DNA of 64,000 bases, from the NCBI RefSeq assembly GCF_006345805.1, contig NC_043021.1, positions 3,162,001 to 3,226,000 on the forward strand, in the 5' to 3' direction. Below the pieces are notes generated by a model that was not told the DNA's origin, did not search any database, and saw only the letters and a list, made by a program, of their open reading frames with translations. A program made the position numbers and the translations under genes. Each line of letters starts with the position of its first letter. Position 1 is the first letter of the stretch. Below are positions 3,633 to 50,433 of the stretch, one piece after another. This DNA comes from Octopus sinensis (lineage: Eukaryota).

Positions 3633-3679
<47 letters not shown>

Positions 3680-10980: not shown

Positions 10981-11189
10981 ATATAAAGACATTGATCTAT
11001 AATTTTGGTGATATTTTCAACCTGTGAGTTTCCTTAACTGCTTGCCTGTGGGAGGTTGAAGGAGTTATTTTGCAGCTAAGTAGCTGTCCAGTGAAGTTCA
11101 GAAATGCACCTTATTTCAGTACAAGGTATTTCAGTCAGTCATTCAACACTTGGACTTTGAACTTCTGCACACAAATGTTTCACATTACA

Positions 11190-11520
11190 CACAAAATGAC
11201 TGTGTGGTAAGAGGTTTGCTTCCCAACCACATAGTTTCAAGTTCAGTCCCACTACGTGGCACTTTGGACATGTCTTCTTCTATAGCACCAGGCTGACCAA
11301 AGCCTTGTGAGTGGATTTGGTAGACAGAAACTGAAAGAAGCCTTTCATATATATATATATACATGTCTTTGCATAATAGTTGTAAGCTTGTGTCACCATT
11401 CCAATCTTTTGTGGAAACCTGTCTGGTCAATTGGAAATATTTCACTTGGAAGCAGGTAAGGGTTGACAACAGAAGAGGCAACCAGTTACATAAAAATCCA
11501 CCTCACCAAATTCTGTCAGG
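11190..11520 (+). mobile_element. SINE with family A head and a different 3' half
   Basis: TGTGTGGTAAGAGGTTTGCTTCCCAACCAC...GTTCAGTCCCACT...GTGAGTGGATTTGGTAGAC, then (TA)n, then a tail unlike other A copies. Confidence 0.65.
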
Positions 11521-14686: not shown

Positions 14687-14717
<31 letters not shown>

Positions 14718-14784
14718 ACACACACACACATATATATATAATATATATATATATAAAATTATCAAACCATAAAGTTTGTCAGAA

Positions 14785-17700
14785 ATGTCTGCAAACAAAA
14801 AGCGTGGTGGCAGTAGCCGTGTCTCAAAGGCTGAGCAAGCACTAAAGAGCAGCAGCGGTAATGGCAGACCAGGAAGGTTGGTGGTAGAGTCTGGAGAAGA
14901 TACTCCCAAGTCAGTGGAGAAATCTTCCTCAAAGTCTAGTGAAAGCGTTGGAAATCAAACCCCAAAGACCTCTGTGAATGCTGGAAAAGCTGTTCGTAAA
15001 GCTGGACGCCCTCGAAAGCCTCGCGACGGTGATGGCAGTACACCAGCAACTTCCACAGCCCTACAGAACCCTGCCACTCTTTCTACCTCTGGTCCGCTGT
15101 CATCTGTTGGTGCCAAAAAAAGAGGCCGAAAAGCCAAGAATCCCGAATCTGCAGTTTCCACTGGGAGGAAAAAGAGTATTAATAAACGTGCCCTTGAAAT
15201 TGTGGATACTTCGAAAGCAGCAATGGAGAAGTTACAAAAGAAAAAACCCAAAGGAACAAAGTTGTTGGCCACAACAAAAAGTAAAAAAATAGGGAAAGTT
15301 TACACAGAAAAGGGAATTCTTAGCAAAGTAAAGAAGGTTTGTCCAACAGAAAGCAAAGGCGCTAACAAGAAAGCTGCTAAAGAACTACAGTCTGTAAATA
15401 ATAGTAAACTAAAATCTTCAACTTTGCATAAAGTTCTCAAAGGTTCTAAAACAAAGAAATTGTTTTCAAACTCTGAAACTGATACCAGTGAAAGCAGCAA
15501 AATGCCAAAATCCAAAAAACTAGGGCACAACAAAGACAGTAGCGGGACTGGGCTTAAAAAGGTTAAGCTAAAAACTTTGATTAAGATGAAAAAATCTGGT
15601 AGTCAGCCAGGTAGGAAACGCAAAATACCTCAAGCTGAGTGTGAAGATTCTAAAAAGAAAACCAAAGCCAAAAAAATTGTCCAAAGTACTCCGGCCATTA
15701 TCTCAAAACGGAAGTGCAAAAGTAAAAAAAATGACAATCCAGAAAGCGAGAACAAAGGCCAGTTGGTGATAAAGAAAAAACCAGGTCCTGTGAAAGGAAG
15801 TAAAAAGGCTGTCCCAAAGACTTCTGCACTTGATACTAGCAGTAAAGTACAGAAACTGAAGAAATCGTTATCGGATAAATTAAAAATTAAGAAATATAAG
15901 AAAGTGAAAGATAACCCGTCTCCGCACAGACTTAGTGGCGCTGAAAACGTGGTTCAGCAATCCAACAAGTTTGAATCAGCCGATAATAGTAGAATATGTG
16001 AAACAAAAGATATCTGCTTCTCAAAGACATCTCCACTTGAGTCAGGTACACCTACGAATGGAGCAGAAAGTTCTAAAAGACTGGTGAAAACTACACTGGA
16101 CAGTCATAAATTGAATGTTCAGGGTGTCCATGAAAGTGAAATATCCGATTGTTTCAAACAAGGAGTTAATGAGGATTCTATCAACAATGTCGTAGAACTG
16201 GCTGACATGTCTAACAGTGAAGGACTCAATACTGTCTTGGTGCCAAACAAGACCAAATTCCTCAACTCTTCGGTGACTGATGTTACGGACAGCGAAGATG
16301 TAAATACACAAAGCACAATAGACAGTGAGGATGTCACTACGCGAAGTACTCTCGATAGCGAGGATGTGAATACTCAGAGTACCGTGGAAAGTGATCGAGT
16401 GACTACTCCTTGTACAGTTGATAGTGAGGCAGTCAATACTCCAGGTACTGTTGATAGTGATCAGGTTAACACACCATATACCATAGATAGTGAAGATATA
16501 AATACTCAGAGTACTGCAGACAGTGAGAGGATCAATACTCCTTGTACAGAAGAAAGTGAAAACGCCATCCCTCCGCTTTCTGTTGACAGTGAGGAGGTGA
16601 ACACCCCTTGCAGTGTCTTCAGTGAACAGGTGAACACCCCTTGCAGTGTCCTCAGTGAACAGGTGAACACTTCCTGCAGTGTAGATAGTACAGAGGCTGC
16701 AATGCCAAGCTCAATAGAAAGTGAACGGATTAATACACCTTGTTCGATTGATGCTGACGATCCCAGCAGTTGTGAACTGGTAGCTTCAGATTTGAAGGCT
16801 ACTCCTGTTGTCAGTTCCCAGAGTCTAGAATACAACACTGTGGAATCTTCGAAAACCCCAGTTAATCTGAAGGTGGAAGATAATGTGTGTTCCAATCAGA
16901 CGTTAAGTAGTCTTGAACCGAAGTCACCAGCGGCAGCAGCAGCGGCAAGTGTGGAACCATCAATTTTACTTGATAACCAATCCAAAGAAGTGATAAATAC
17001 AGGTAGACAGAGTTCACTTCCAAACTCAGAAAGTTCTGAACCAAACCAAGCTGACTGCCAGTCGTTTCCCAACCAGTCCAAAGTTGAAGTGGAGGATGAC
17101 ATTTATGCCAAACCAGCAAGCTCTGTGGAAATGAGTCCTTTACTTTTGGAACTTTCCCCTGCTGAAAGTGACATAAACGTAGTTGATGATGTCGAGGTTG
17201 TTGATCCCACTAACACATCACCAACTGAACCAGATCTGTCTACAGACAATCAGGCAGATCTTGGCTCAGAGTTGATTCGCAGTCCTGTTTCACACAGTAA
17301 GAAAGCTTCCGAGCAGTTGCTGGAAATGCAACATTCTACAGAAGAAAATCATGGAGATTGTTCTACGTTTTCAGCACTGAAGGAGAAAAACTGCGATGAC
17401 TCTTCGGTGTTTACTGTTCAGGCAAAACTTGTGTCTTCAAATCCATCAGTTGAATTAGTTTCAGATGCCACCAGTTCTATGCCGGTGTTTTCATCAACTG
17501 TTAGCAAAGATCTTCAAGCAACAAATGTTGCAGCCGTATTTATTCCCTCTGCAAAGGCTGAGGACGAAGCTTACAGATCTAAATGCTGCACCAATGATGT
17601 TGGAAATCTTGCAGAACCAGTGCAAAAAGAACTTGCTATTGCTGCAGAAGATAGTAAAGAATCTGTGACTGATGAAGTGTTGGAAAAGTCAGCATGTGTC

Positions 17701-20700
17701 AATATGCCTGGCTTGGTGTCTGTCATCTCAAGACCTTCCATTATTTCTTCAAGTAAAACAGACATTATTAAACACCAGCAGCAAACTAACCCAGCTGATA
17801 TACATAATCTACACGAAGACAACAAGAAACCATTTCAACCCCAGTTCCCTGTCAAAGAGAAAAACATTTTTGCCTCGTTTGCTGAACTTGATCCCAAGCT
17901 TCACGAAAAGCCTCTGTCTGTAATCCGAGCAACAGCAAATCCAGAAGCTAGTGTTTCAGCTTCACTGGTGATGGAGATGTTATCACCACCCCCATCTTCC
18001 ACCTTCAAACTCTCAAACTGCACTTCTGTATTGAGCAAGATCTCGAAATGTAGCACCGATGTAGACACGTGTAGTCCTGATGGAAATAAATCAGCCACTA
18101 AAATCCTGCAGGATCTTTCTTCATCTGAAACTGTTCCGACCAGAATTCAATCACCACCACCACCGGAAACAATTTCTCACGGCTCTTCATTCTTTGAAAG
18201 TAAAATGAATTACGTAAAGGCTACGGAGACAGAGACTTCAGCCTCACCACCCAGAGCTGGTGAGGAATGTCATAAAATCACATCGTCACACACTTATTCG
18301 AAATTTGCTGAAGATTTGCCTGATCAGAGAAACCTGCTGAAAGTTATCTCCCTTGAGCAACCTTCCTCTGGTGGTGAGCCACAACCTGCTTCACAAGCAA
18401 CACCATTGTTACTTGGAAGTAAACTGTCAGCAAAGCAAAAGGATGATCAACCTCCAGCAACTGAATTGGATTCCACATCTGATGAACAGAAAGTTGTTGA
18501 GAGCAGTTTGAGTACGAAAATACAATGGCAGCCAAATGCTGTAGCCGCCATGTCTTCTGATGCCAAAGAGTTGGACCCTAACATAGCGTCTGTGATCAAA
18601 TGTAGTGATGGTGCCAACAAGTCTGATCCAATTAAACTGTTCAAAGAGCAAATCATTAAGAATGAAATTCCTAATGAATCGCTTCAAATTAAGACTTTAC
18701 CCAGTAAAGATAATTTGTATTCTCCTTCCAGTATTGTTGCCACGGCTGCGTCTGAAATTGACTTAAATTTGAACACTGCAGCATGTTCTGCTAGCTTTAA
18801 AGATGAACGTGGTTTACCCTTGGATACAGCTTCTGTCAAACTTGATCCAGACAAGCCTACGGATAATGACATTTTCAAAGTTAATTCTGATTTACAAAAA
18901 GATACAGTTAATCTTAAAGATGATGCTGATACACAGTCAGATTCAGCTAGTCCTAAAACAGATCCTTATATGCAATCAGATGAGGATAGCCCTCAAGTCA
19001 ACTCTGATGTGCTATCAAATGAAGATAGCCCCAAAGATGAGCCTGATACAATACTGAATGTAGATAGCCCCAAAGATGAGCCTGATACAATACTGAATGT
19101 AGATAGCCCTAAAGATGAGCCTGATACAATATTGAATGTAGATAGCCCCAAAGACGAGCCTGTTACACTATCAAATTTAGATATCCCCCAAAATGAGTCC
19201 AACACATTATCAAATGTTGATAGCCCCAAAGATGAACCTAATGCATTATCAAATATAGAAAGTACCAGATATGAGCCTGGTGTATTATTAAATGTAGGTC
19301 ACCCCAAAGTTGAGCTCAATACATTGTCAGATCTAAGTATTCCTAAAGATGAACCTGGTACATTGTCAAATGTAGATAGCCCTAAACATGTACCCAATGC
19401 ATTATCAAATGAAGATAGCCCCAAAGAAGAGCCTGATACATTAATAAGTATAGGTAGCCCCAAAGATGAGCCCAATATATTAATAAATATTGATAGCCAC
19501 AATGTTGAACCTAGTATATTAATGAATGTAGGTAGCCCCCAAAATGAGCCAGATACATTGCCCAGTGTAGGTAGTCCCAAAGTTGAACATGGCACGTTGA
19601 TAAATGTCAGTAGCCCCAATGATGAACCCACTACATTATCGAATGTAGATAGCCCCAAAGTTGAACCTGACACAGTAATAACTGTCAGTAGCTCCCAAAA
19701 TGAACCCAATACATTATCAAATATAGGTAGCCCCAATGATGAGCTCAATACATCAATAAATGTAGGTAGCCCCAATGATGAGCCCAATACAATAATAAGT
19801 GCAGGTAGCCCCAAAGGTGAGCCCAATACAATAATAAATGCAGGTAGCCCCAAAGGTGAGCCCAATACATTATCAGTTGTTGGAAGCCCTAGAGATGAGC
19901 CCAGTGCATTATCTATTGTTGATAGCCCTAGAGATGAACCTAATGCATTAATAAACGTTGGTAGCCCTAGAGATGAGCCCAATACATTATCAATTGTTGG
20001 TAGCCCTAGAGATGAGCCCAATACATTAATAAATGTTGGTAGCCCTAGAGATGAACCCAATACATTAATAAATGTTGGTAGCCCTAGAGATGAGCCCAAT
20101 ACATTAATAAATGTTGGTAGCCCTAGAGATGAGCCCAATACATTAATAAATGTAAGTAGCCCCAAAAGTGAGCCTGATACATTATCAGTTGCTGTTAGCC
20201 CTAGAGTTAAGTCCAATACATTAGTAAATGTAAGTAGTCCCAAAGATGAGCCCAATACATTGTCAGTTGTTAGTAGCCCCAAAGATGAGCCCAATACATT
20301 GTCAATTGTTGGTAGCCCCAAAGATGAGCCCAATACATTAATAAGTGTAGGTAGCCCCAAAGATGAGCCCAATACATTGTCAATTGTTGGTAGCCCCAAA
20401 GATGAGCCCAATACATTAATAAGTGTAGGTAGCCCCAAAGATGAGCCCAATACATTGTCAATTGTTGGTAGCCCCAAAGATGGACATGATACATTAATCA
20501 ATGCAGATAGTCCCAAAGATAATAAGTCTGATGTATTATCAAATATAAATAGCCCCAAAGATGAGCCCAATGCAATATCAAATACAGACAGTCCCAAAGA
20601 TAAGTCCAATACTTCAATAAATGAAGGTAGTCCTAAAGATGTACCTGATATACAATCAGGCGCAACATGCCCCGAAATTGACCTCAGTATGCAGTTTGAT

Positions 20701-23700
20701 GTAACTAACTCCCAAGTTGATGCTAATATGCAATCAGATTCTGAATGTTCTATGGATGTGCAGTTGGATGCAACTAATTCCGAAGTTGATGCCAATTTGC
20801 AGTCAGGCTCAGCTTGCTCTCGAGTTGAACTTGACATGCAGTTGGAAGTAACTAACCCTGCAGCTAACCCCATTATGCCTCTGTCTACAGCAGATGATTT
20901 GCAAATGAATTCAGCAGCTTCCAAAGCTGATGGTGGCTCTCAGTCGACTGTGACTGTTGTTAAAGTCAATTCTGCTGCTTATCAAGACAAATGCAGTCCT
21001 GACGTGAAGTCAGATGTTACTGACAACACAAACACTCCCCCTCCTGCATCTTGCGAGCCATCTTCCCCTGTGGTTGCTTCAGAGAATAAATCTCTTCAGC
21101 AGAATCAGTCTCCAGTCGCTGGAGATAAAGCAGAGCAGTTCATCAAAAAAACATCAAAGCCTTCGGATCAATGCCAACCATGTGAAGTGAACGATAGTTC
21201 TCAGTCCTCTTCGTTATTTCCACCTCATCAAACTTCATCATCGTCATCATCAGTATCATCTGTAATACTTCCATCATCATCGTCATCCTCATCCTCCTCA
21301 TCATCATCCTCATCGGCATTGTCATCATCATTGCCATCAACATCATCATCATCATCATCAGAGCTACTGACTCATGAACAATCACCTAGCTTAGCTCTAT
21401 CAGATATGCCTTCTCAAGAACAGAAACTACCATTGGTTATAAGGTTTAATGATTCATCTAATACATGTGATGTGAAAAGTGACGAGGAGAAGGAAGGAAA
21501 ATCCAGTGTCAAAGCAGAGGCAACCAGTGTTGTGGTGGCAGAGAAGACGGATGTGGAAACGAAGATCAGTGAAGAAAATGCAGTTAGTTCTGTAGAGTCT
21601 TTGAATGACTCAAACGTAAATGGCATTCCTGAAAGTATAGGCAATGGCAATGAACCTCCTCCTGATATCAAGGCTTCTAGCCTTGATCCTTCATCAAATC
21701 TCAGCTGTAGTAGTGATAGTAGTAATAGTAACAGCAAGACGTTGTCTACTATGGTGACTGTTACTTCATCATCTATGGCTAGTCCATCATTGTCGAAATC
21801 TGATGAGGCTTCTGTGATACATAGTGAAGCCTCCTCCGATAGTGCAGTACCTTCCTATAAAAAGAACCCTGGTGCCTTGATACAAAATCCAACAAACACA
21901 ACAGAATCTTTGGCTGCATTTTCTTTGAATTCTGCCCCCGTTAAAAAGGAGACTCTTACTGTCCCCCCAATCAAGATAAAGGTCGAGTCTGAAGCAACTC
22001 CATCGGACTCTTTGTCCCATTTGTCAACCTCCATGGTGATAGCTCCAGCCGCTGCTCAAAGAATTCTCTCGTTAGCAACTCTGGCCAACAAAGTCACTCT
22101 GAAATCTAGCCATGCCACACCAGCCATTAAGAAATCAAAATCAGAAGATTCTGAAAGTGGCAATTTGTTATTGAAAGGAGAGACAGGTGGTCACCTGGTG
22201 GAAAGCGAAGATAACAGTGAAAGCGTGGATGAAAGAGTTTCTGGTTCAAAGAGCAGTGCTCCAGCTCCCCATAGGGTTGTGAGTGGAGATTTAACCGACC
22301 ATTCGAAGGCGGCCACAGTTGCCGCTCCTTCAGATAAAGTTCCTGAAAGAGATGTTTCTGGCTCATCAGCATCTACAGAATCTCCAAACATTGAGAAGCC
22401 TCCTCTTGGCAATGATGAGGATAACCTCTCCAGTGTTGAATTAGGGAAAACCCCTACAGCTACCGACTTGGACAAGGGCTCTGCAGAGAACACTAACAAC
22501 AGTTGCCTGAAATCTCCAAACTCCACTTCTAACCCGCAGCTTGTTTGTGACCCTTCTCCGAAAGAGAAGGACAGTGAAGAGCAAAGAAAAGGTTCTAGTT
22601 GTCAGGTTACTGTTGACCTGTCCGTCTCGGTCAGCATCGAGCCCCCTCCCACTCCCTATCCTCCCCTCTCCATATCTCCAAAGGCATCTCATAAGAACAT
22701 AGAGATGAGCAATGAGAGAACTGAAATGAGGTCATCCCCCCCTGATGATAAATCCAGCTCCTTAGCTGCAGTTAATAAGCCAGATGTGGAAATAGTCAAA
22801 CCACAGCTGAAGCCATCATTTGCTATCTTTGACAGCTGCCTTGTGTGCATAATTTGCCGGAAGATGTGCAAAAGTAAGAAATCTTTCCAGGCGCATGTGT
22901 GGTGGCATTTTCATGCTTGTAGTCGGATGTGCACCCATTGTCTGCCTCCTCCAGAACCCATCAGTATTAATAACCAACACAAACTTCAGCTGAATAAGTG
23001 CCCTTATGTGATGGATGTTATGGTTAAGATATGTCGCACTCTTAAAAAGATACGTCAGGCGAAGCTGCAGTCTGGCAAAGACCAGGTTGAACGTGAAAAA
23101 ACATTTGCAGAGGAGGAAACTGACACCGAGAGCGTGGATCTAGACTACGACTTGAACAACGGTGGTAGTGGTGGCGGTGGGGAAAACAGTAGCAGCAGCA
23201 AGATGGCGGATCTGTCACTGACCGCAGCACAAGTTGACAGCAGCCAGTCAAACAACCAGAAATCCAATGCAACCGATGACAACAGTATATTTGCCCCGGC
23301 AAACGTTGAGTATCTCAGGTCCCTCTACTCCAGTGGTAGTAACAGCAAAAAACGGACTAAAAAGTCTTCTTCCAGTGGCCCGAACCACCACCACCACCAC
23401 CACCATCACCACCACCACCACCATAGTTCGTCCTCGTCGTCTTCTTCGTCCACCTCCTCATCTGTGGTAAACTCTTCAGTGTCGTCTTCCCACAAGAAAG
23501 GGGGTTTCTATGTCTGCGGTTTTCAGTACTGTACTTACTCCTGTATGAATTGTCTTCAGTTCCGTCTGCATCTCCAGCAGTGTCATAACTTTGAAACTGT
23601 GTTTCCTTGCTACCATTGTGGCCAGCTGAATTATTCAAAAGATGACCTCATCAAACACATGTACAATCATTCAAATGCGCGAGATTTTCTGCTATTTCGA

Positions 23701-26429: not shown

Positions 26430-26553
26430 GTAAGTTGTTTTAATTTAATCAGTAGGTCTCTCACTTTCTCTAATTTTGCACAGGGAACCTCGTCATATGC
26501 TTTAGTTACTGAATCTTATCTACTTTTGTTGTTTTTAAAAATTTATGCACATA

Positions 26554-26945
26554 GGGGCAGGAGTGGCTGTGTGGTAAGTAGCTTGCTAACCAACCACATG
26601 GTTCTGGGTTCAGTCCCACTGCGTGGCATCTTGGGCAAGTGTCTTCTGCTATAGCCCCAGGCCGACCAATGCCTTGTGAGTGGATTTGGTAGACGGAAAC
26701 TGAAAGAAGCCTGTCGTATATATATTTATGTTTGTGTATATGTTTATGTGTCTGTGTTTGTCCCCCTAGCATTACTTGACAACCGATGCTGGTGTGTTTA
26801 TGTTCCCGTTACTTAGCGGTTCGGCAAAAGAGACCGATAGAATAAGTACTGGGCTTACAAAAAGAATAAGTCCCGGGGTCGATTTGCTCGACTAAAGGCG
26901 GTGCTCCAGCATGGCCGCAGTCAAATGACAAACAAGTAAAAGAGT
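26554..26945 (+). mobile_element. Full-length SINE family A (tRNA-like head, CCTTGGGCAAGTGTCTT-type central domain, internal TA/TG microsatellite)
   Basis: GGGGCAGGAGTGGCTGTGTGGTAAGTAGCTTGC...GGTTCAGTCCCACT...TGGCCGCAGTCAAATGAC...AAGTAAAAGAG; resembles known octopus tRNA-derived SINEs, exact family not verified. Confidence 0.9.
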
Positions 26946-26955
26946 ATATGTTTAA

Positions 26956-27372
26956 GCCATTAGCATTCAGATTATTATGTCAACTATGTTGGTTCACATT
27001 GTTTTCAATTAATCATGCAATTATCTTGTAGCTTTGAGTGTTTGATGGTGTGATTGTTTATTTTTAGAATGGCATTGTAGCATTGATGCAAGAGGCAGGA
27101 TCTGGCCAAGGAAAAGCTGGTAGAATATCTTAGATATGGCTGGTTTTAAATTCTCCAACCCTTTGGCATTTGTATTATTTTGTCAAAAGCAATGCTTATT
27201 TATTCACACTGTTTTGAATTAATCATGCATTATCTTGTAGCTTTGAGATTTTGATGAGGTAACTGTTTAGAATGACATTGTAGGGTTGGTGTGATAAGCC
27301 AGATCTGGCCAGTTTGAACATAAAAGAGACAGAATATTTGGGCTGGATGTGGCCAGTTTAAATGCTAAAAGG
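26956..27372. mobile_element. Two adjacent degenerate family D MITEs
   Basis: TTAA-GCCATTAGCATTCAGATTATT at 26952 and CCCTTTGGCATT at 27159; bodies similar to 11795-12013. Confidence 0.7.
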
Positions 27373-27703
27373 TAGCTCAAAGAAATGACCATTACTATAT
27401 TCTCTTGACCATTTGTCATGTTCTCCTTAAATTAATGCAATAAATGAATCGATTGCTTGGCTTATGATAAATGGCCCCTATTGTGTTTAGTTGAAGGAGA
27501 AATGGGAATTGTGGGCAAACATGCCTATTCCAGAGGCATTAGCAATGTAAGTGAAATAATTTTCACTATGATGAGAAATAAGATTGCACTCATCTTTACC
27601 AGGAGATGATGTCCTATGCAGCTCATAAGCAAGCTACTATTAACTTGTTTGGATGAAGAGAAGCTAAGCCATCGACCTTTACTGCTCAATATTTGCTTTA
27701 AAT

Positions 27704-27911
27704 CAGTGGTTGTCAACTGGGGTCCATATAAGATTTTGTTGTTAAAATTTATATGTAGTAAATTAATTGTACAATAAACAAAATATTTTCACAATTCTTT
27801 TATACAATTCCTAATAATATTTAATCATAGTCACTGAATGGTTAGGAGGGATTCCACCCTGCTTCTTGAGTAAAATAGGAATCTAGGCCCCAAAACGGTT
27901 AAGAACCACTG
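27704..27911. mobile_element. hAT-type MITE (right TSD interrupted by a piggyBac-type MITE)
   Basis: TIR CAGTGGTTGTCAAC / GTTAAGAACCACTG; left TSD CTTTAAAT. Confidence 0.8.
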
Positions 27912-27917
27912 CTTTAA

Positions 27918-28126
27918 CCCTTCAGCATTCAGATTTATTCTGTCACATGTAATGCCTTTTTCATTCACGTTGTGTTTAAATAATCATGCTTTATCTCCCA
28001 GCTTTGAAATTTTGATGATGTGATTGTAGATTTTTAGAGTAGCATTGAAAGGTAAGTGTGACCAGCTGCATCTGACTGGTTAGAACCAAAAACAAGAAGC
28101 ATATTTGGGCCTGGGATGTGTCTGGG
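27918..28126. mobile_element. piggyBac-type MITE, family D
   Basis: TTAA-CCCTTCAGCATTCAG...GGG-TTAA (28127-30). Confidence 0.75.
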
Positions 28127-28183
28127 TTAAATAAACATGGGCGGGGCTGGGTATATAGAAGCTGATAGAAGTGGCAGCACATC

Positions 28184-28581
28184 TCTCTTTTACTCTTATT
28201 TGTTTCAGTCATTTGACTGCGGCCATGCTGGAGCACCGCCTTAAATCGAGCAACTCGACCCCGGGACTTATTCTTTTGTAAGCCCAGTACTTATTCCATC
28301 GGTCTCTTTTGCCGAACCGCTAAGTAACGGGGACATAAACACACCAGCATCGGTTGTCAAGCAATGCTAGGGAGACAATCACAGACACACAAACACACAC
28401 ACGCATATATATATATATATATATACGACAGGCTTCTTTCAGTTTCCGTCTACCAAATCCACTCACAAGGCTTTGGTTGGCCCGAGGCTATAGCAGAAGA
28501 CACTTGCCCAAGATGCCGCACAGTGGGACTGAACCCGGAACCATGTGGTTGGTTAGCAAGCTACTTACCACACAGCCACTC
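28184..28581 (-). mobile_element. SINE family A
   Basis: Reverse complement of the 26554 copy along its length. Confidence 0.9.
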
Positions 28582-29798
28582 TGGGTATTTGTTGAAACAT
28601 GTGAGTGAAATGTTGCCAATTTGATGATATTGATCGATTCTGGTTTCTATCAGCCTGTTCGATTCCAGCCCATTTGAGACTGGCCCCAGTTCTGTGATAA
28701 AGACTTCCTGTTTTAACGTGATCTCAAACCTTTCATCAAAGTTTCATATTTATGTTCCAAACATCAGCTTAATAATGACAAAGTTTACTAAATTCTTTAG
28801 AATTTTCTAAATTAATTGTATTAGTGAAGGCAGTGCATGTCAATAGAAATATGATAACTAGCATAAAAAAAAAATATCTTTACCAACATTAGCAAAACCA
28901 GTGGGTTTTTTTTCCTATGCTATTCCTTGTGTAAACCCACTACAGTTTAGAAATCACTAACATTGACTGTATGGCTTTTTTAAACACCTTGTTGTCTCCC
29001 TTTATGTGCTGAGTTTATTTCAGTGATGTGTTTCCTTGGGCCACAGGCACTGATGTATGGCTTCAGTACTGTTTAACTGATCTAAGATGAATCTGTTCCG
29101 GGATAGGATGCCAGCCTATATAGCAAGTAACATCCTCAGACAAACTTGTACCAATTCCTGACGGCTCTAAGGTCTATAGAATTCTTGTGTTATGTTCAGA
29201 AACACAAATAAGTATTTGTATCTATTACGATTGATGGTTTGTTAGCCAGTTGTCTTACACCTAGTCACTTGACCAATGTGTTTACACAACCCTTAAATAA
29301 CGATTTCTTTAACCAAACATGAAATAGGGTTAGACTGACCACACAATAGAACTGTATTCAGCCATGTTCCTCTTTCACGTTCTTATCATTGTCGTTTAAC
29401 ATCCACTCTTCCATGCACAGGTCAGAATTCCCTTTTTTTCTTCTTCTTCTTTGAGACAGCTTTTCTATGACCAGATGCTCTTCCTGTTGCCAACCTCACC
29501 TGTTCCCAAACCTGATAATAGTTCCTCGTGGAAGACTGGAAACAAACATCACCTGTTGTATGTTGGTGATACACTTTTACAATCATAAAATGATGTCACG
29601 GCATGGTCACACACACACATAATGAGCTTCTTTCAGATTCCATCAACTAGATGCATTCACAAAGACATGGGACCCTGACAGGTGCTACTAATCTGCATCA
29701 GAGTAGACCTGGGAAAAATAGTGGCTAAGAAACAGTCCCACATGCCACAAAACCTTGGAACTTCTGACACCAGTGCCCCGCTACCAGATGCAGTTTAA

Positions 29799-30016
29799 CC
29801 CTTTCGTTACCATATTTTTGAGATGTTCTGTGTTTCTTTCAATTAATTTTAAATATAACAAAGAATTTAGTAAAATAACTTAGTTATCATTAAGCTAGTG
29901 TTAGGAAGATACATTGTGACTAAGGTTTGGTGGAAGATTTTAATTCAGAACTTTTGCAAACAAGACATTTGTATTCAGAGCCAGAGGCAGTTTCAGCCAG
30001 GTTGGTATCGAAAGGG
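29799..30016. mobile_element. piggyBac-type MITE, family C
   Basis: TTAA-CCCTTTCGTTACC...GGTATCGAAAGGG-TTAA. Confidence 0.85.
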
Positions 30017-30520
30017 TTAAAACCATACCCATTAGACTTAATTGTTAATGCTAAGTGAGTTATGGTTGTAGAAGTGAAATGGCACAAATGGAATAATGGG
30101 TGCTTTGAGGTGTAATTAGAAGCGTGGTCATCTTGCAAGTGATGGATATGGAATTCAGATTCTCTCAATGGTTCTGTTCTTTTTGTCTCTAGTTTGTAGT
30201 TTATAATATCTGAGAAAAAAGACTTCTCCATACACTGTCAACATCAAGTACTGTATCCATTTCATTCTGAATATCCCAGTCTGTTTGGCTGTAAGTAGAT
30301 ACCAGAGTGTGAAATTCCTTCAAAACTCTGCAGCTTGTGTGAGTGACATAAACAATAGTTTTGTTAGTTTTAGGTTCTGGGTATAGGTTCTCTTGTAGCC
30401 CTGGTACATGAATAGATTGTGCCCCACAATGGAATCATATTTCAGTATGGACATCACGGAATATGATACCATTTGTGGGTGTGTGTGTGTGTGTTCACAC
30501 CTGTGCTTATCCCTCTATTA

Positions 30521-31380
30521 TATTAGGTTGTCAAGAAAGTTCTTGCGGCTTTTAACCTTCAAATTCAGATGCACATATCTTGGCTCAAACAAAAATTTAT
30601 TAATCAAAATAAACACCATCAGAATCAACACTTTTGCCAACGCAAAACGAGTTTATTTATGCGAGTAGCATACAAATTTGGTGACAAAGTCGTTGAAGTT
30701 GTGTTTGGCATTGTCTTGGTTTTTTAAGCATTTCTCACTCAGGAAGTTGTTGAGATGCTTGAAAAAGTGATAGTCAGTAGGCAAGAGGTCTGGTGAGTAT
30801 GGCTGATGAGGCAGAGTTTCGTAGCCCAATTCGTTTGACTTCTGCAGGGTCAGTTGTGCGGCATGCGACCGAGCGTTGTCATGGAGAAGAATTGGTCCTT
30901 TTCTATTGACCAATGCTGGTTGTTGTTATCAGAGTTTCTTATGCATTTTGTCCATTTGCTGACAGTACTTCGCTGTAATGGTTTCGCCTGGATCCAAAAA
31001 GTTGTGATGGATGAGACTGGCTGCAGACCACCAAACAGTCACCATGACCATCTTTTGGTGCAACTCTGACTTTGGGAAGTACCGTGGAGCTTCGTCAACG
31101 TCCAACCACTGAACTGAGCATGGCAGTTGTCATAAAGAATCCACTTTGCATCGCAAATCACAGTCCGGTCAAGAAACGGGTTTTTGTTGCGTAAAAGACG
31201 ACGACAAAACGGGGTTGTTTTTTTTCTTTGGTTGGCGTTCAATTCGTGTGGCACCCATTTCTCAAGTATTTTTGTTTTTCCAATCTCTTTCAAGTGGTTG
31301 GAAATTGTCGTATACATTACGTCTAATTCAGAAGCAATTCTTGGCCAGAGAGTTTTGAATAAACCCACAACATATTTTAT
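30521..31380 (-). pseudogene. Decayed mariner (DD34D) transposase with one TIR
   Basis: Fragments KWVPHEL, CDAKWILYDN, LLHDNARSH and YSPDLLPTDYHFF in shifted frames; TATTAGGTTG terminus at 30521. Confidence 0.9.
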
Positions 31381-31386
31381 AGTATA

Positions 31387-31631
31387 CAGTAAATCCCTCA
31401 CTATATCACGGTTCACCTATTGCGGTTTATTATTTAAGCTTATGTCGATTCCTCCATGGTATCGTTTTACATTTATGATAAAATAAATACATACAAATTA
31501 TAAAAATAATAACAAAAAAATATGGAATACTGATAAAAAAAATTATAGAGTATGATACTGTTTCTACTTTGACCTATCGCGGCGGGGTGGGGTTTTGAAA
31601 CGTAGCACCAGTGATAGTCGAAGGATTACTG
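31387..31631. mobile_element. Tc1/mariner/pogo-type MITE with TA TSD
   Basis: TA-CAGTAAATCCCTCACTAT...ATAGTCGAAGGATTACTG-TA. Confidence 0.7.
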
Positions 31632-32473
31632 TACTCCACAGTTGTTAATCTGCTGAAATAACAGATAATTGTAGCAGTAAAAGCACAACCAACTCATCAG
31701 GCAGTATATTGTGTAGCCATGAGATTATCATTGTACTGTGTATTTAGAGGTTTCCTGATCACTTGATAGCGACTGCATAAATAAAAAAGCCAACAGTGAG
31801 GGAGACACAATTGAGTTCTACTATTTTGGCATAATAAACAACTGCTTCTGAGTATCATTTTTGTGATAAGCCCTTCGTATCTGTTGGCTCAGCAGTTCTG
31901 GAAGCTATATCTTCTTTTAAGTAATTCCCAGTAACTGAAAAGTGTCTGAGAATTCCACAAGATAAAAGAGATCTTAGATAAAATTTGATAAATATTTATT
32001 AAAAGTTATCCATTTCAACATAACATTTTACTTGTTTCAGTCCCTGGAGTATTGTCCTATTGGAGCACTAACTTAAGAGTTTTGTCGGTCAAATCGGCCC
32101 CAGTACTATTTTTATTATTATTATTATTTTTAAGTGCATTATTTATTTATTCTATTGGTTCTTAAGCCAATCTGCTAAGTTACAAGGGCATAAACAAACC
32201 TACACCGGTTAAGAAGCAGTGGTGAAGGACAGGCACGTGCACACTTCGTATGTATGTATCTGTCTGTGACGAGGTTTTATATTTTGCTTTTTTCTGTTAC
32301 ATTCTCTCTTCTAAATAATTTCATTTAATCTGTCTCTCATGAAAATTAATTTGCTGGGAATTATCCATTAAATAAAGACATGAATGGGTTCCAGAACGGC
32401 TGGCCACACACATCCGAAGTTATTTATCTCAAAGTCTTTGTTGACCTTTTCTTACTACTATACGTGTCCAATA

Positions 32474-32843
32474 GGCGCAGGAGTGGCTGTGTGGTAAGTA
32501 GCTTGCTTAGTTCTGGGTTCAGCCCCACTGCGTGACATCTTGGGCAAGTGTCTTCTGCTATAGCCTCGGGCCGACCAAAGCCTTGTGAGTGGATTTGGTA
32601 GATGGAAACTGAAAGAAGCCCGTCGTATATATACGTGTGTGTCTGTGTTTGTCCTTCTAGCATTGCTGGACAACCGATGCTGGTGTTTATGGCCCCGTAA
32701 CTTAGCGGTTCGGTAAAAAATGACCGATAGAATAAGTACTAGGCTTACAAAGAATAAGTCCTGGGGTCGATTTGTTCGACTAAAGGCGGTGCTCCAGCAT
32801 GGCCCACAGTCAAATGACTGAAACAAGAAAAAGAGTAAAAGAG
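32474..32843 (+). mobile_element. SINE family A
   Basis: GGCGCAGGAGTGGCTGTGTGG... through GAAACAAGAAAAAGAG. Confidence 0.9.
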
Positions 32844-33607
32844 CCTTTTACGTCTAGACACCCCTATTGGAAAGAAAATATAATTAAGTAAAGGAGAAAA
32901 AGAAATCCGTAGAAATACTGTCGGTTCCGGGGAGATAACTCTGTAACTTCCAACTTTTACTTTAATTAGTTTAGAAATGTGATGACGGATTCTGGTGCAT
33001 TCTGTAGTTTAACTTTGATAGCTTTGGATGTTATTTTAAATGGCTAGTATGGTTCTCTTCCACGATGTAATTGCTTCAGTTTCAAGACACTGTCCCAGGT
33101 CAAATCACTTGCCGGACAAGTACAACTCCGAAATTAGTAAATATATTTCTGGAGCATTCGAGATACTTCCAAGTCAAAAAAAGCTACATGTTCACGACGC
33201 TTTCTCCAAAAGTGTACTTTCTCGTCAAATAACTAAAACTAGCTACACTTAAAGAATGTGGAGTTAACTTGTGTGGAACGACGATTAACTAATGCAGTTG
33301 TGGTTACACGTCGGAGCAGGGTGCAAACTAAATGTTGCCTTTCATATTATTTCTGAATGCACTCTGCTTGCGTGATTGCGCTAACAATGTTTATTCCCAC
33401 AACAGAAACAAACGTGTTTTTAAGACAATCGGTCCTTGATGCGTCCCTCAACTGCCCTTACAATCAAAATCCATTACTCCCAAGTGGTTTGTCTGCAATA
33501 ATAAATTTGTCATCGGCCAGTTTTAAAAAAGACATTTATTAATCAAATATCTTGACAAGGGAAGCAACTCTTGGATGTGCTTGTATATTAAGCTTCTCTC
33601 TGATTTA

Positions 33608-34020
33608 TTTACTTACTCTTTTACTGCGGCCATGCTGGAGCAGCGCCTTTAGTCGAGCAAATCGACCCCGGGACTTACTCTTTGTAAGCCCAGTACTTAT
33701 TCTATCGGTCTCTTTTGCCGAACCGCTAAGTAACGGGGTCATAAACACACCAGCATCGGTTGCCAAGCAATGCTAGGGGGACAAACACAGACAAACATAT
33801 ACACACACATATATTTATTTGTATATATATATATATATATACACACACATATATACGATGGGCTTCTTTCAGTTTCCGTCTACCAAATCTATTCACAAGG
33901 CTTTGGTCGGCCCGAGGCTATAGTAGAAGACACTTGCCCAAGGTGCCATGCAGTGGGACTGAACCTGGAACCACGTGGTTGGTAAACAAGCTACTTACCA
34001 CACAGCCACTCCTGCGCCTA
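33608..34020 (-). mobile_element. SINE family A
   Basis: Ends CACACAGCCACTCCTGCGCCTA (reverse complement of the head). Confidence 0.9.
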
Positions 34021-34526
34021 CAAGTACTTACAATATGTTCATGGCCCTTTCTCCCAAGATGTACTTTTGTGAACTGCTAAAACTAGAATGAAAGAATGTG
34101 AAGTTAACTTGTGAAACGAGGATTAATTAATGCAGTTTTGGTTACGTAGGAGCGGTGTGCATATTGTTGCCTCCCATAGAACATTCGTATAATCATTTGT
34201 AAAGGAATGTGGTTTTGTGGTTAAGGTAACTGCACTAATAATGTTTATTCCCTCCCGCCCCAACTGAAGCGAACAGGTGTTTTTGGAGCAATTCTCAATT
34301 GCCCTTACAGCCGAAATCCATTACTCGAAGAATTGAAATAAAACCAATGACATCATCGGCCAATTATAAAACTCGTTTATAAGTGACAAAGGGAAGCAAC
34401 TCTTTGTTGTGTTTGTCTATTAGCTTTTTCTCTCCGTGGTTTGTTACTGCAAGCCTGTTTGTACTCAACTAACAGGCAACAACCAGAACATTTTATCTTT
34501 TATCTATTTCAGTCATTAGACAAGGT

Positions 34527-34795
34527 ATGGTGCTGCTGTAGTTTATAGCCCCAGGAAGACATCTCCTCCAGCTGGCTATTGACATACTGTCTGTGCAAAG
34601 GGAAATCATTGTTCCCATCTCCAGCCTGATGCGATACACACGGACCCAGGTTTCTGAGCAGTAACCCGTCATCAGCACGTGACAATCAGTGGCTAGGGAT
34701 GAGAAGTGATATTTCCTTTTGCAAATATTGATAGTGTGCACACTAGCCAGCTGGAGGAGATGTCTTCCTGGGGCTACAAGCTAGAGTAGCATCAT
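34527..34795. repeat. Inverted repeat with a perfect 33-bp core (MITE-like or RNA hairpin)
   Basis: 34546-34578 is the exact reverse complement of 34744-34776; imperfect pairing extends on both sides. Confidence 0.85.
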
Positions 34796-34989
34796 CCCAT
34801 ATGGGTCAACCACATTTAGGTGGCAAATATACTTCACAATATATATGTATGTGTGTGTGTGTGTGTATATATATATGTGTATATATATGTGTATATATGT
34901 ATGTATATATAAATAAAATGTTTCTATTTCTTGACTAATGTTTGCTCTGCACTAATCCCTTTTTTTTCTCTCTTTGTTTTTATGAACAG

Positions 34990-35737
34990 GAAGAAGATTG
35001 CTGATCATATTGATGAATTCCATCAAGCACCACTGAAGATTGTTGTAGATAAAAACTTCAAGAAATACCAAATGGTATTTCCTTCACTGGGTGCCAGCAG
35101 AGAAAAGTTCCGTAGTAAGGGCATGACAGACATGTACCGTCACCGAAGAGCAAGTGGCAGTACCAGAAACAAAGTTATCAACCTTGACGACTCCGATGAT
35201 TCTGACGACTCCGAGTCGACGTCTGACTGGCGGCCTTCCTCCGAGAGCGATGACGATGATTACATCACACGATACTGCTGTTGTTATTGTTCGATGCGAA
35301 CACATGACTATGAGCGCTTCCGTAAGCATATTGCTAAACATTCCAGAAGCTGTGAGGAGCTTCAGTGTCAAAGCTGCTCATACCGTACGCATGATACGTA
35401 CAAGTTTGAGCATCACCTCAAGAAGCATCCAAGGGAGCATTTTTGTGGCTACTGCAACTTCTCGTCGATGCAAGAGTCCTTTGTGCAGCTGCATGTTCGG
35501 CGATTGCATCCAAAAAAACCAATTCAGATTCATAGTCGTAGCAAAGCTGCTGCAGCCAGCAACAGGACTCTGCCATCTGCGGTGGTGCCAGCCAATTTCA
35601 ATGTGCGTGTTGTTCTTAAAGACTTCCTGGCACTTGACACTCTGGAATTTGATTCCTTAATGAAAGCCAATTTCATTCACAGCATTGATCTTGAAGACAT
35701 TGTTCTTGAAGAAGATAAACTGTTGTCTGTATTGTGA
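34990..35737 (+). CDS. Last coding exon of the giant zinc-finger protein (completes one finger, adds three, acidic linker, stop TGA)
   Basis: Frame matches the 26429 donor; CCYC..HIAKH, CQSC..HLKKH and CGYC..HVRRLH fingers. Confidence 0.88.
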
Positions 35738-36629
35738 TCTCTCCATCACTCCTCCTCCTCACCCTCCTCCTCCTCTCTGAAGAAGAGGGGTGGTTTTAAC
35801 AAACAAACAAACAAACACACCCTTTCCTAGCCCCTCCCCCCTGCTGTACATAGTACCATTGGTTGATAATGTAGCCAAATAAAAGTCTAGACAAATACTA
35901 TAACCAAGATGGAGAAAAATAAGAAAAAACAAAAAAAAAAAAAACTTGGTTGGCTGATGAACTTACAAAAAAAATTTTTTTTTTTTTAAACCTGTGTTTT
36001 ATTTTTCAAATTCTTCTGTGAAGAATTAGTGGCCGTTTGCTTCAATAAGATTAGGAAGAATCTGAGCAGGAACCAGCAACCTTGAAATGGTTCTTAATGT
36101 GATTCCTTTCCATTGGAATGTAATTTGAAGTTTAAAGTTCTGAATCTCTCTCACCGTGGCATGTGGTCTTTAACTGGTGTCACAAAGCTTAAGTTAAAAC
36201 AGTTTCCTCCTGTGACATTTGTTAATTAAGGACCAGCTTCTTTACTTCAAACATCCTGGTTTTCATCCTACCCTCCCATCCACCCACCCACCAACTGTAA
36301 ACACGTTTGCGCCTGTGCACAGAACGCATTTGCATCCACCCGTCAATTCTCCTCCCAGAATCCTGTTCTGGGCTTGAGACATTACAGGTGATCGATCATC
36401 AATATGTGTGTCACCTGTAGTGTTAATTGGTGAAAATTGTCATCATACCTTAAGTTTGGAACAAGGGAGAAGTAATAATGACACCTTGCCCCACACCCCA
36501 ATCCTGACCCATGCATGTACCAGCCCTGTTGAGACAGGCACCAAGACCCACCTTTAAACCTGATAAAAACCCATTTTGAAGATATCATTAAAAGAAATGA
36601 AAACACCAAAAGGCATTCATTTAAAGCTG

Positions 36630-47578: not shown

Positions 47579-47933
47579 ATCCAAACATGAAAACACGAGG
47601 ACGTGGAAAAGTATAGTATTATTGGATGCTCAGGAAAGAAGGAGAGTTTTACGTTTCGAGCGGAGCTCTTCGACAGAAACAGGAAAAATCCAAAGAACGG
47701 AAGACGGAGGAAAAAACAAAATCGCCAACAGTACACACGCGGTATATATTGATAGAAATGGTAAGACAACAAAGAACGAGAGAGACCTCGATATTATGTA
47801 AATAGAGGAATTTATCTGTAAATGTAATATGTGACAATTATTTGGTAGCCATGATAAAACTCTGAGTTTCCACCCCGTCATCCGAATCTCGGAGTTTTAT
47901 CATGGCTACTGAATAATTGTCACATATTACATT

Positions 47934-47935
<2 letters not shown>
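47574..47935 (-). mobile_element. Penelope-like pseudo-LTR fragment with inverted 5' end, between TA microsatellites
   Basis: Minimal hammerhead-like motif; 48-bp inverted duplication at one end; (TA)n and (CA/TA)n flanks. Confidence 0.6.
47646..47680 (-). ncRNA. Minimal type I hammerhead ribozyme motif, core-mutated (probably inactive)
   Basis: Minus strand GTTT-CTGTCGA-A-GAGC-TCC-GCTC-GAAA-CG-TA-AAAC: stem I GTTT/AAAC, stem II GAGC/GCTC, GAAACGTA; CUGANGA appears as CUGUCGA. Confidence 0.55.
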
Positions 47936-47977
<42 letters not shown>

Positions 47978-47996
47978 CACACACACACATATATAT

Positions 47997-48027
<31 letters not shown>

Positions 48028-50370: not shown

Positions 50371-50399
50371 ATATATATATATACATACATATATATACA

Positions 50400-50431
<32 letters not shown>

Positions 50432-50433
50432 CA

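What the first reader, a model, noticed from the sequence alone, without database searches (positions are those of the whole stretch)
14785..35737. ~4130-aa modular chromatin-type protein: AT-hook, ~2600-aa repeat-rich low-complexity region, ~22 dispersed fingers
The spliced ORF is 11645+748 nt = 4130 aa plus stop. Fingers are dispersed or paired, mix C2H2 and C2HC, and lack TGEKP linkers, so it does not look like the tandem Kruppel-type ZNFs expanded in coleoid cephalopods. The layout is more like dispersed-finger corepressor scaffolds (WIZ/ZNF644, ZNF462, ZNF532/592/687 classes), but I cannot assign orthology. The repeat-rich middle may be a lineage-specific addition to an older finger core.
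Basis: partly seen in the sequence, partly recalled or inferred. Interest (0 to 1): 0.75.

Follow-up and report, generated by a model that had tools for sequence, protein, structure and literature searches.

The report
Giant cephalopod zinc-finger chromatin protein gene
This is a real gene for a 4130-residue nuclear zinc-finger protein of an octopus-like cephalopod; it belongs to an unstudied family of giant finger proteins found so far only in molluscs, brachiopods and ribbon worms, and it is not the counterpart of any characterised vertebrate protein we could test.

Summary
ATG 14785 to donor 26429|gtaagt, acceptor cag|34990, stop TGA 35735-35737 gives a 12393-nt CDS of 4130 aa. The splice completes a C2H2 finger. 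It is confirmed by a spliced transcript contig from a related cephalopod and by the same phase-2 intron position in a distant family member.

The architecture is as described: a basic N-terminus with an AT-hook-like motif, about 2300 aa of acidic Ser/Pro-rich disorder (11-aa repeat x14, 13-aa repeat x42), then about 22 C2H2/C2HC fingers with no TGEKP linkers. One correction: the fingers are not only dispersed or paired. A contiguous five-finger block (aa 2905-3075) is the family signature.

A full-length but uncharacterised orthologue exists in Argonauta hians (4364 aa). It shares the AT-hook and a related 13-aa repeat. Octopus and Sepia carry a paralogue. Every family member that carries a name is lophotrochozoan: bivalves, gastropods, Lingula and Lineus.

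ZNF462 orthology was tested against real ZNF462 sequences and failed. The WIZ/ZNF644 and ZNF532/592/687 classes were not tested.

Most likely function (inferred): a DNA- and chromatin-binding scaffold or regulator. The finger core is old; the AT-hook and repeat half is a cephalopod-lineage addition. Interest is moderate.

The parts
14785..26429 (+). Giant coding exon (aa 1-3881 plus 2 nt of codon 3882), from ATG 14785 to donor CG|gtaagt
   Evidence: Stop-free by chance P about 1e-104. The Argonauta orthologue starts with the same MSANKKRG.
26430..34989 (+). Phase-2 intron (8560 nt) splitting a C2H2 finger (CGYCLFRAYSR|KKIADHIDEFH)
   Evidence: gtaagt...cag. Transcript contig L001 joins about 26426 to about 34988. 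L002 has the same position and phase in a distant family member, and several family ORFs end at that spot.
34990..35737 (+). Last coding exon (aa 3882-4130) with stop TGA 35735-35737
   Evidence: It is 69% identical at nucleotide level to the 3' part of L001.
14785..15984 (+). Basic Lys-rich N-terminal region (aa 1-400, net charge +74), 50-76% identical to Argonauta (70-76% over aa 1-300)
14998..15036 (+). AT-hook-like motif KAGRPRKPR (GRP core with basic flanks). A second, weaker basic motif KKRGRKAKNP lies at about 15115-15144
   Evidence: Both motifs are identical in Argonauta and absent from 18 other family members scanned.
16288..16749 (+). Array of about 14 acidic 11-aa repeats (DSEDVNTQSTV type; 33-nt unit)
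19027..20664 (+). Array of about 42 in-register 13-aa repeats (SPKDEPNTLINVG; 39-nt unit), holding 37 SP sites
   Evidence: Argonauta has about 14 copies of a related unit, PLNVGGPQDESET.
21235..21360 (+). Poly-serine tract (TCA-type trinucleotide repeat) inside the disordered region
22837..22914 (+). Lone upstream finger (CLVCIICRKMCKSKKSFQAHVWWHFH), a colinear anchor shared with bivalve, brachiopod and nemertean members
23386..23484 (+). His13 followed by a poly-Ser tract just before the finger core; also present in the related transcript
23497..24009 (+). Family signature: five-finger block (aa 2905-3075). Finger 4 has no fourth zinc ligand among the conserved alignment columns (HLxxNLLKFVxCPHC). 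Finger 5 carries an HPxKPKQIVVT strand extension
   Evidence: 71 cluster representatives match the full length at more than 50 bits. 17 Cys/His columns are invariant. dN 0.034 against L001. AF2 pLDDT 91.6, pTM 0.78.
24082..24849 (+). Dispersed single fingers, including two C2HC (aa 3100, 3332)
25117..25869 (+). Three copies of a two-finger module with 7-residue linkers (e.g. ...HLWKTHLKLKPVRCPCCPF...). This is the region most similar to CTCF fingers
35276..35509 (+). C-terminal three-finger module, conserved across molluscs
35576..35734 (+). Conserved C-terminal tail (V.L.DFL.MD..EF..L.......IDL), partly helical in the model

Best explanation
The region is one protein-coding gene with at least two coding exons. 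It encodes a 4130-aa nuclear protein built from three parts.

(1) A strongly basic N-terminus with an AT-hook-like motif. It probably gives low-specificity contact with AT-rich DNA and nuclear import.

(2) About 2300 aa of acidic, Ser/Pro-rich disordered sequence. It contains two fast-evolving tandem-repeat arrays. These probably act as a flexible, multiply phosphorylatable spacer or multivalent interaction platform.

(3) A 1450-aa core of about 22 fingers under strong purifying selection.

The core defines an uncharacterised family of giant C2H2 proteins. All of its named members are lophotrochozoan. The core comprises a lone finger, a five-finger block predicted to fold as one rigid unit, dispersed fingers, three canonical-linker two-finger modules, a finger pair split by a conserved phase-2 intron, and a C-terminal three-finger module with a conserved tail.

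The most likely mode of action is a chromatin-bound scaffold or transcriptional regulator. The canonical-linker finger pairs and the AT-hook would hold it on DNA. The rigid block and the C-terminal tail would serve as docking surfaces.

Shown: gene structure, coding status, family membership, conservation pattern, and lineage-specific origin of the N-terminal half.
Inferred: nuclear location, DNA binding, and the scaffold role.
For: Gene and splice. Spliced transcript from a relative. Conserved intron position and phase.

Orthologue and paralogue: Argonauta hians, 4364 aa; Octopus LOC115224503 and Sepia.

Family breadth and names. Signature block. Colinear anchors. C-terminal module and tail.

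Selection: block dN 0.034 with dS saturated (not computable), and 95% amino-acid identity against 72% nucleotide identity. Identity to Argonauta is 100% over aa 2901-3000, against 17-39% across most of the disordered part.

DNA-binding plausibility: the block profile aligns to CTCF and TFIIIA finger arrays (E 5e-23), and the two-finger modules match CTCF. Linker lengths are 7 residues.

Rigid block: AF2 pLDDT 91.6 and pTM 0.78, against pTM 0.34 for the C-terminal trio run the same way.

Basic N-terminus: +74 net charge and an AT-hook-like motif conserved in Argonauta.
Against: - There is no experimental or expression data for this species. The only transcript evidence (L001) covers the last ~1270 codons (aa ~2860-4130, from the poly-His tract to the stop) and comes from a relative.
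- The fold of the block is unlike DNA-wrapped arrays (TM 0.16, rmsd about 16 Å), so it may bind protein or RNA rather than DNA.
- Residues at the classical DNA-contact positions of the block vary across the family (consensus).
- The AT-hook-like motif has Ala where canonical hooks have Arg or Pro before GRP.
- A further 5' exon cannot be excluded. An AG lies just upstream of the ATG.
Confidence: 0.6

Rival explanations
1. It is the cephalopod orthologue of vertebrate ZNF462/ZFP462. It would then act like it, targeting G9a/GLP and HP1 heterochromatin through its C-terminal fingers.
For: Sub-threshold or borderline hits of ZNF462-specific Pfam finger models: PF23225 and PF23075 in the window; PF23223 at 28.5 bits in P0001; PF23225 in 14 of 33 blocks. 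The overall layout is similar: a giant exon and about 20-50 scattered fingers, some with an 'HP.K + strand' extension.
Against: All the real ZNF462 sequences that include the N-terminus carry six ZNF462-specific Pfam models together (shorter isoforms and fragments carry four or five); the window carries none above threshold. The block profile finds no five-finger counterpart in ZNF462 (best domain 37 bits, on generic tandem fingers, against 85 bits for CTCF). BLASTP gives 41 bits or less and is non-colinear. Mouse ZNF462 ranks generic tandem ZNFs above family members. PF23225 is promiscuous, scoring 69-136 bits in generic or REST-like ZNFs.
Confidence: 0.05
2. Only the C-terminal finger core is a functional protein. 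The 5' 8 kb of the open frame would be untranslated, or translated only in a minor isoform, with the real product starting at an internal exon or ATG.
For: aa 800-2700 are barely conserved even against Argonauta (10-50% per 100-aa window, mostly 17-39%). The transcript evidence in hand starts only at the poly-His tract. Other family members have far shorter N-terminal parts.
Against: The frame stays open for 3881 codons (P about 1e-104), while the other frames carry 93-468 stops. The repeat units are multiples of 3 nt and stay in register over 38 units. The first 300 aa are 70-76% identical to Argonauta, with identical AT-hook motifs and the same start. L001 is open upstream to its very 5' end.
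Confidence: 0.07
3. The finger core is mainly a protein- or RNA-binding platform rather than a DNA-binding one. The rigid five-finger block would be an interaction domain, and chromatin contact would come only from the AT-hook region.
For: AF2 predicts fixed inter-finger packing (pTM 0.78), with finger 4 showing no conserved fourth zinc ligand and a strand pairing between residues 121-126 and 156-161 of the block. The global fold is unlike DNA-bound arrays. There are no TGEKP linkers. DNA-contact positions vary.
Against: Individual fingers and linker lengths are canonical. The best sequence and fold matches are DNA-binding arrays such as CTCF, TFIIIA and PRDM9. The three two-finger modules have canonical 7-residue, KP-containing linkers.
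Confidence: 0.25

Closest known systems
Argonauta hians hypothetical protein Ahia01_001087500 (GAB1608034.1, 4364 aa)
   Same: Full-length orthologue. It has the same start and identical AT-hook-like motifs. It has a related 13-aa repeat, the same block (nearly identical in sequence) and the same C-terminal module. The finger region is 70-100% identical per 100-aa window, apart from its last 30 residues in the MAFFT alignment.
   Different: It is uncharacterised. The disordered middle is only 10-50% identical (mostly 17-39%). It has about 14 repeat copies against about 42, and it is 234 aa longer.
Octopus sinensis LOC115224503 / O. vulgaris 'serine-rich adhesin for platelets-like' (3421/3415 aa), and the Sepia counterpart
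   Same: Cephalopod paralogue. It has the block (46% identity), the split finger pair, and the C-terminal trio with tail in the same order.
   Different: It has no AT-hook motif, a different and shorter N-terminal part with three fingers, and a long acidic tail after the last finger. Its database name is an artefact of Ser-rich composition.
Uncharacterised giant C2H2 proteins of bivalves, gastropods, Lingula anatina (LOC106171239) and Lineus longissimus (LOC135501493)
   Same: They share the signature five-finger block, the lone upstream finger, and many downstream fingers. In molluscs they also share the C-terminal trio plus tail. At least one bivalve-clade member has the same phase-2 intron.
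   Different: They have 27-50 fingers instead of about 22, an N-terminal finger triplet, no AT-hook, and unrelated disordered regions.
Vertebrate ZNF462/ZFP462 (G9a/GLP-HP1 recruiting factor; bioRxiv 10.1101/2021.06.28.449463)
   Same: A giant nuclear protein with many scattered C2H2 fingers, some with an 'HPxxK + strand' extension. The likely kind of work, a chromatin scaffold, may be similar.
   Different: There is no signature block, no colinear similarity, and no reciprocal best match. The ZNF462-specific Pfam set is absent.
CTCF / TFIIIA-type tandem finger arrays
   Same: The best sequence and local-fold matches for the block and for the two-finger modules.
   Different: The global arrangement of the block differs (TM 0.16). 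There are no TGEKP linkers. Finger 4 has no conserved fourth zinc ligand. There is no homology outside the generic finger.
HMGA-type AT-hook proteins
   Same: GRP core flanked by Arg/Lys/Pro (KAGRPRKPR) within a highly basic region.
   Different: There is a single clear hook, with Ala instead of Arg or Pro before GRP. Binding is untested.

Membership tests
Lophotrochozoan giant C2H2 family (unnamed; e.g. GAB1608034.1, LOC115224503, LOC106171239, LOC135501493) | Five-finger signature block of about 170 aa with invariant Cys/His pattern and the NLLKFVxCPHC...HPGKPxQIxV motif | tested here: met
   Window aa 2905-3075. 71 cluster representatives (84 proteins) match the full length at more than 50 bits. 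17 Cys/His columns are invariant in A1.
Lophotrochozoan giant C2H2 family (unnamed; e.g. GAB1608034.1, LOC115224503, LOC106171239, LOC135501493) | Colinear order: lone finger, spacer, block, dispersed fingers, split finger pair, C-terminal trio plus conserved tail | tested here: met
   Colinear BLAST chains against the Octopus paralogue, Argopecten, Sinanodonta, Lingula, Lineus and Mizuhopecten. Alignment of the C-terminal module.
Lophotrochozoan giant C2H2 family (unnamed; e.g. GAB1608034.1, LOC115224503, LOC106171239, LOC135501493) | Phase-2 intron seven residues after the CxxC of the second finger of the split pair | tested here: met
   Window AGC CG|gtaagt against L002 TAT AT|gtaagt. The ORFs of P0006, P0012 and P0031 end at the same spot.
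ZNF462/ZFP462 | The set of ZNF462-specific finger models (PF23077, PF23223, PF23224, PF23225, PF23075, PF27047) present together | tested here: not met
   Among the 120 listed ZNF462 sequences, all those that include the N-terminus carry the whole set; shorter isoforms and fragments carry four or five. The window has only PF23225 (21.4 bits) and PF23075 (20.4 bits), both below the 27-bit cut-off. PF23225 also scores high in generic ZNFs.
ZNF462/ZFP462 | Colinear sequence similarity and reciprocal best match | tested here: not met
   BLASTP gives 41 bits or less, non-colinear. Mouse ZNF462 prefers generic ZNFs to family members. The block HMM finds no five-finger counterpart.
ZNF462/ZFP462 | C-terminal fingers recruit G9a/GLP, WIZ and HP1 and silence a tethered reporter | not testable with these tools
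   The defining experiment is in bioRxiv 10.1101/2021.06.28.449463. No interaction data exist for this protein.
Krüppel-type tandem C2H2 ZNFs (the class expanded in coleoids) | Long tandem arrays joined by TGEKP linkers; strong Pfam zf-H2C2_2 and zf-C2H2 scores | tested here: not met
   0 TGE[KR]P motifs. No significant zf-H2C2_2 or zf-C2H2 hit, against 287-772 bits (zf-H2C2_2) in generic ZNFs.
AT-hook proteins | GRP core flanked by basic residues, in a basic context | tested here: met
   KAGRPRKPR at aa 72-80, identical in Argonauta. The region has net charge +74. The motif deviates from canonical hooks: Ala precedes GRP.
AT-hook proteins | Minor-groove binding to AT-rich DNA | not testable with these tools
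   This needs EMSA, NMR or footprinting.
WIZ/ZNF644 and ZNF532/592/687 scaffolds | Sequence similarity to these proteins or their specific domains | not tested
   No sequences of these proteins were fetched. Neither the Pfam scan at E<=1 nor the named hits of the exhaustive search pointed to them.

The most novel reading that the evidence does not exclude
The five-finger block may be a previously undescribed rigid multi-finger domain. In it, four complete fingers and one with no conserved fourth ligand would be locked together by a strand pairing, and it would be the defining module of an ancient family of giant chromatin proteins restricted to Lophotrochozoa. In cephalopods, one paralogue would have acquired an AT-hook head and a rapidly expanding repeat-rich disordered body. 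That would make it a lineage-specific chromatin organiser.
Probability: 0.3. Interest if true: 0.55.

Novelty: new variant of a known kind. Interest (0 to 1): 0.4.

Why it matters
Giant scattered-finger proteins such as ZNF462, WIZ and ADNP are key chromatin organisers in vertebrates, yet nothing is known about their counterparts in molluscs. This gene shows that lophotrochozoans have their own conserved family of such proteins, with a highly constrained five-finger module and a conserved C-terminal tail. It also shows that cephalopods duplicated the gene and attached a new AT-hook and repeat-rich half to one copy. It is a concrete candidate for lineage-specific chromatin regulation in cephalopods. 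It also illustrates how disordered repeat arrays grow onto an old DNA-binding core. No function has been demonstrated, and the gene is already predicted as a 'hypothetical protein' in a related species, so its importance for now is modest.

Tried and rejected
(1) ZNF462 orthology. I followed up the weak Pfam hits by fetching real ZNF462 sequences. The query for that fetch was a sequence recalled from memory, which matched Aotus ZNF462 at 99%. Orthology was rejected.

(2) The search for homologous proteins with the block alignment A1 returned nothing. With the finger region it returned only 3 proteins, missing relatives that the exhaustive search found. Its word index is clearly incomplete for these proteins, so its negatives were ignored.

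(3) Partial block hits (P0061, P0066, P0082, P0116) were checked as possible vertebrate relatives. They are generic tandem ZNFs, some fused to RT or integrase.

(4) Naming of unnamed family clades failed. Contig look-ups gave only run or analysis accessions, and those accessions appear in no paper.

(5) Species identification by exact look-up of the last-exon product gave no record.

(6) PDB sequence and fold searches gave only generic C2H2 matches.

(7) Rfam and tRNA scans of the window found nothing.

(8) The 541-aa ORF on the minus strand (19299-20924) was considered and rejected as a gene. It is the antisense reading of the 39-nt repeat array.

(9) Literature searches for ZNF462 in invertebrates or cephalopods found nothing relevant.
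Full report
OBSERVATION

The window holds an ORF of 3885 codons on the + strand (14776..26433) and a second ORF at 34931..35737. The first ATG is at 14785, 12 nt after an in-frame TAA. The long ORF ends 4 nt after a consensus donor (AGC CG|gtaagt, 26429/26430). A pyrimidine-rich acceptor (...tttttatgaacag|G) lies at 34989/34990.

Joining the two gives 12393 nt = 4130 codons plus a stop. The stop is TGA at 35735-35737. The join is in phase 2 and completes a C2H2 finger (CGYCLFRAYSR|KKIADHIDEFH).

At the local base composition, the chance of 3881 stop-free codons is about 1e-104. The other five frames of the same stretch contain 93-468 stops.

INDEPENDENT SUPPORT FOR THE GENE MODEL

- A 3851-nt contig from a public sequencing run (Logan, ERR12374249; L001) encodes a protein 70% identical over 99% of the finger region.
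- At DNA level L001 aligns to window 23395-25508 and 25654-26426, and then directly to 34988-35737. It therefore lacks the 8.5-kb intron.
- L001 ends in an A-run 8 nt after its stop. Its frame is open to its 5' end through the same poly-His/poly-Ser tract.
- A distant family member found on a 3.3-Mb genomic contig (L002) has a donor (TAT AT|gtaagt) at the same residue offset after the CxxC of the same finger, and in the same phase.
- The ORF-called products of several other members stop at that spot. The intron is therefore old.

ANATOMY (aa)

- aa 1-400 are Lys-rich, with net charge +74. They carry KAGRPRKPR (aa 72-80, GRP core), KKRGRKAKNP and PGRKRKIP.
- aa 502-655 are about 14 acidic 11-aa repeats.
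- aa 1415-1960 are about 42 13-aa repeats (SPKDEPNTLINVG). They are in perfect register for 38 units and hold 37 SP sites. TRF reports period 39, 41.9 copies.
- The whole stretch aa 400-2680 is acidic and Ser/Pro-rich. It has no Pfam match.
- From aa 2685 onward there are 20 strict and about 3 degenerate fingers. Three are C2HC. None has a TGEKP linker.

RELATIVES

An exhaustive HMMER search with aa 2931-4130 found 547 cluster representatives at E<=1e-3, of which 14 were at E<=1e-30.

The orthologue. The best hit is Argonauta hians GAB1608034.1 (4364 aa, 'hypothetical protein'). A full-length alignment gives these identities per 100-aa window:
- 70-76% over aa 1-300;
- 10-50% (mostly 17-39%) over aa 800-2700;
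- 70-100% over aa 2700-4100.
It has the same start and identical AT-hook-like motifs. It carries about 14 copies of a related 13-aa unit (PLNVGGPQDESET).

The paralogue. Octopus vulgaris and O. sinensis (LOC115224503, 3415/3421 aa, mis-named 'serine-rich adhesin for platelets-like') and a Sepia protein form a sister clade. This indicates a duplication within or before coleoids.

Other named members. They come from bivalves (Argopecten, Saccostrea, Pinctada, Mytilus, Sinanodonta, Solemya, Mizuhopecten, Tegillarca), gastropods (Biomphalaria, Batillaria), the brachiopod Lingula and the nemertean Lineus. All are 'uncharacterized'. The remaining clades come from unannotated assemblies and could not be named.

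What defines the family:
- The five-finger block. 71 cluster representatives (84 proteins) match its full length at more than 50 bits. 17 Cys/His columns are invariant. Finger 4 has no fourth zinc ligand among the conserved columns.
- A colinear set of anchors: lone finger, block, split finger pair, and C-terminal trio with a conserved tail.
- The shared intron.

Features special to this lineage. AT-hook motifs occur only in the window protein and its Argonauta orthologue. Other members have a short N-terminal part with a finger triplet, and 27-50 fingers.

SELECTION

Against L001, synonymous sites are saturated while dN is 0.034 in the block and 0.08-0.34 elsewhere in the core. The block is 95% identical in protein at 72% nucleotide identity.

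STRUCTURE

AlphaFold2 on the block alignment gives pLDDT 91.6 and pTM 0.78. It predicts a strand pairing between block residues 121-126 (LLKFVQ) and 156-161 (the extension after finger 5).

The C-terminal trio plus tail, run the same way, gives pTM 0.34, as expected for independent fingers. The block is therefore predicted to be a rigid unit.

Foldseek finds local similarity to DNA-bound arrays (CTCF, PRDM9, GLI). Global TM is only about 0.16 and rmsd about 16 Å. Sequence profiles also align the block and the two-finger modules to CTCF and TFIIIA.

TEST OF THE ZNF462 IDEA

Pfam gave sub-threshold hits of ZNF462-specific finger models. The literature calls ZNF462 vertebrate-specific. I therefore fetched real ZNF462 sequences. 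The results were:
- Those that include the N-terminus carry six ZNF462-specific models together; shorter isoforms and fragments carry four or five. The window has none above threshold.
- The block HMM matches no five-finger region of ZNF462. The best domain is 37 bits, on generic tandem fingers, against 85 bits for CTCF.
- BLASTP gives 41 bits or less and is non-colinear.
- Mouse ZNF462 scores higher against generic tandem ZNFs than against family members.
- PF23225 itself scores 69-136 bits in generic or REST-like ZNFs.

Orthology is not supported. The resemblance is one of general layout, plus a shared finger style (finger followed by HP.K and a strand).

MECHANISM (INFERRED)

The protein is most likely a nuclear, chromatin-bound scaffold or regulator. 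The proposed roles are:
- the basic AT-hook head and the canonical-linker finger pairs hold it on DNA;
- the rigid block and the conserved tail act as docking surfaces;
- the long acidic, SP-rich repeat body is a flexible, phosphorylatable, fast-evolving spacer.

The main rival is that the core binds protein or RNA rather than DNA. The idea that only the core is translated is unlikely, given the open frame, the in-register repeats and the conserved N-terminus.

VERDICT

The finding is real and was described accurately. The gene is one cephalopod paralogue of an uncharacterised giant C2H2 family whose named members are all lophotrochozoan. It is not a ZNF462 orthologue and not a Krüppel-type ZNF. 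An orthologue is already predicted in GenBank as a hypothetical protein. Interest is moderate. The most novel element is the rigid five-finger signature module.

Noticed in passing
window 19299-20924 (-): A 541-aa ORF lies antisense to the 39-nt repeat array. Its translation is itself a 13-aa repeat (LGSSLGLPTFINV...). It is most likely a by-product of the repeat and not a gene.
   Followed up: partly
window 43114-43470 (-): ORF with a Mos1/mariner transposase HTH domain (Pfam HTH_48, E 9e-15), i.e. a mariner-type transposon remnant downstream of the gene. A similar-looking transposase-like ORF in the intron (31039-31416, -) gave no Pfam hit.
   Followed up: partly
window 11185-11481 (-), 32458-32826 (-), 33760-34080 (+), 60293-60601 (-): Four ORFs share the peptide ...SARGYSRRHLPK.(P)RSG.EPGT.WL..K.LTTQ... 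This suggests copies of one dispersed repeat (SINE-like). Two of them lie inside the intron.
   Followed up: no
window 14687-14755 and 34840-34915: (AT)n/(TG)n microsatellites lie immediately upstream of the start-codon exon and of the last exon's acceptor. A very large TA/TG/CA-rich low-complexity zone lies at about 47800-50900 (GC 0.28-0.31).
   Followed up: no
P0074 (1222 aa; MetaClust UPI0006955A39): A divergent protein carrying the block. Its accession lies numerically close to that of an Octopus-paralogue fragment (P0156, UPI0006955A00). It may be a third cephalopod member of the family.
   Followed up: no
P0002 (Tegillarca granosa) C-terminus; P0005 C-terminus: Other family members have their own unrelated tandem repeats or acidic tails in their disordered parts (e.g. 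about 10-aa HNVEQALDRT repeats in Tegillarca). Repeat growth in disordered regions seems to recur in this family.
   Followed up: no
L003 (Logan SRR11869394), aligned to window 34882-35987: A genomic contig 91% identical at nucleotide level, including intron and 3' flank. A closely related species or population has therefore been sequenced, though the accession could not be resolved to an organism here.
   Followed up: partly
Pfam PF23225 (zf-C2H2_7th_ZNF462): This 'ZNF462-specific' model gives summed scores of 69-136 bits on generic or REST-like tandem ZNFs (P0043, P0099, P0147). Hits to it should not be read as evidence of ZNF462 kinship.
   Followed up: yes
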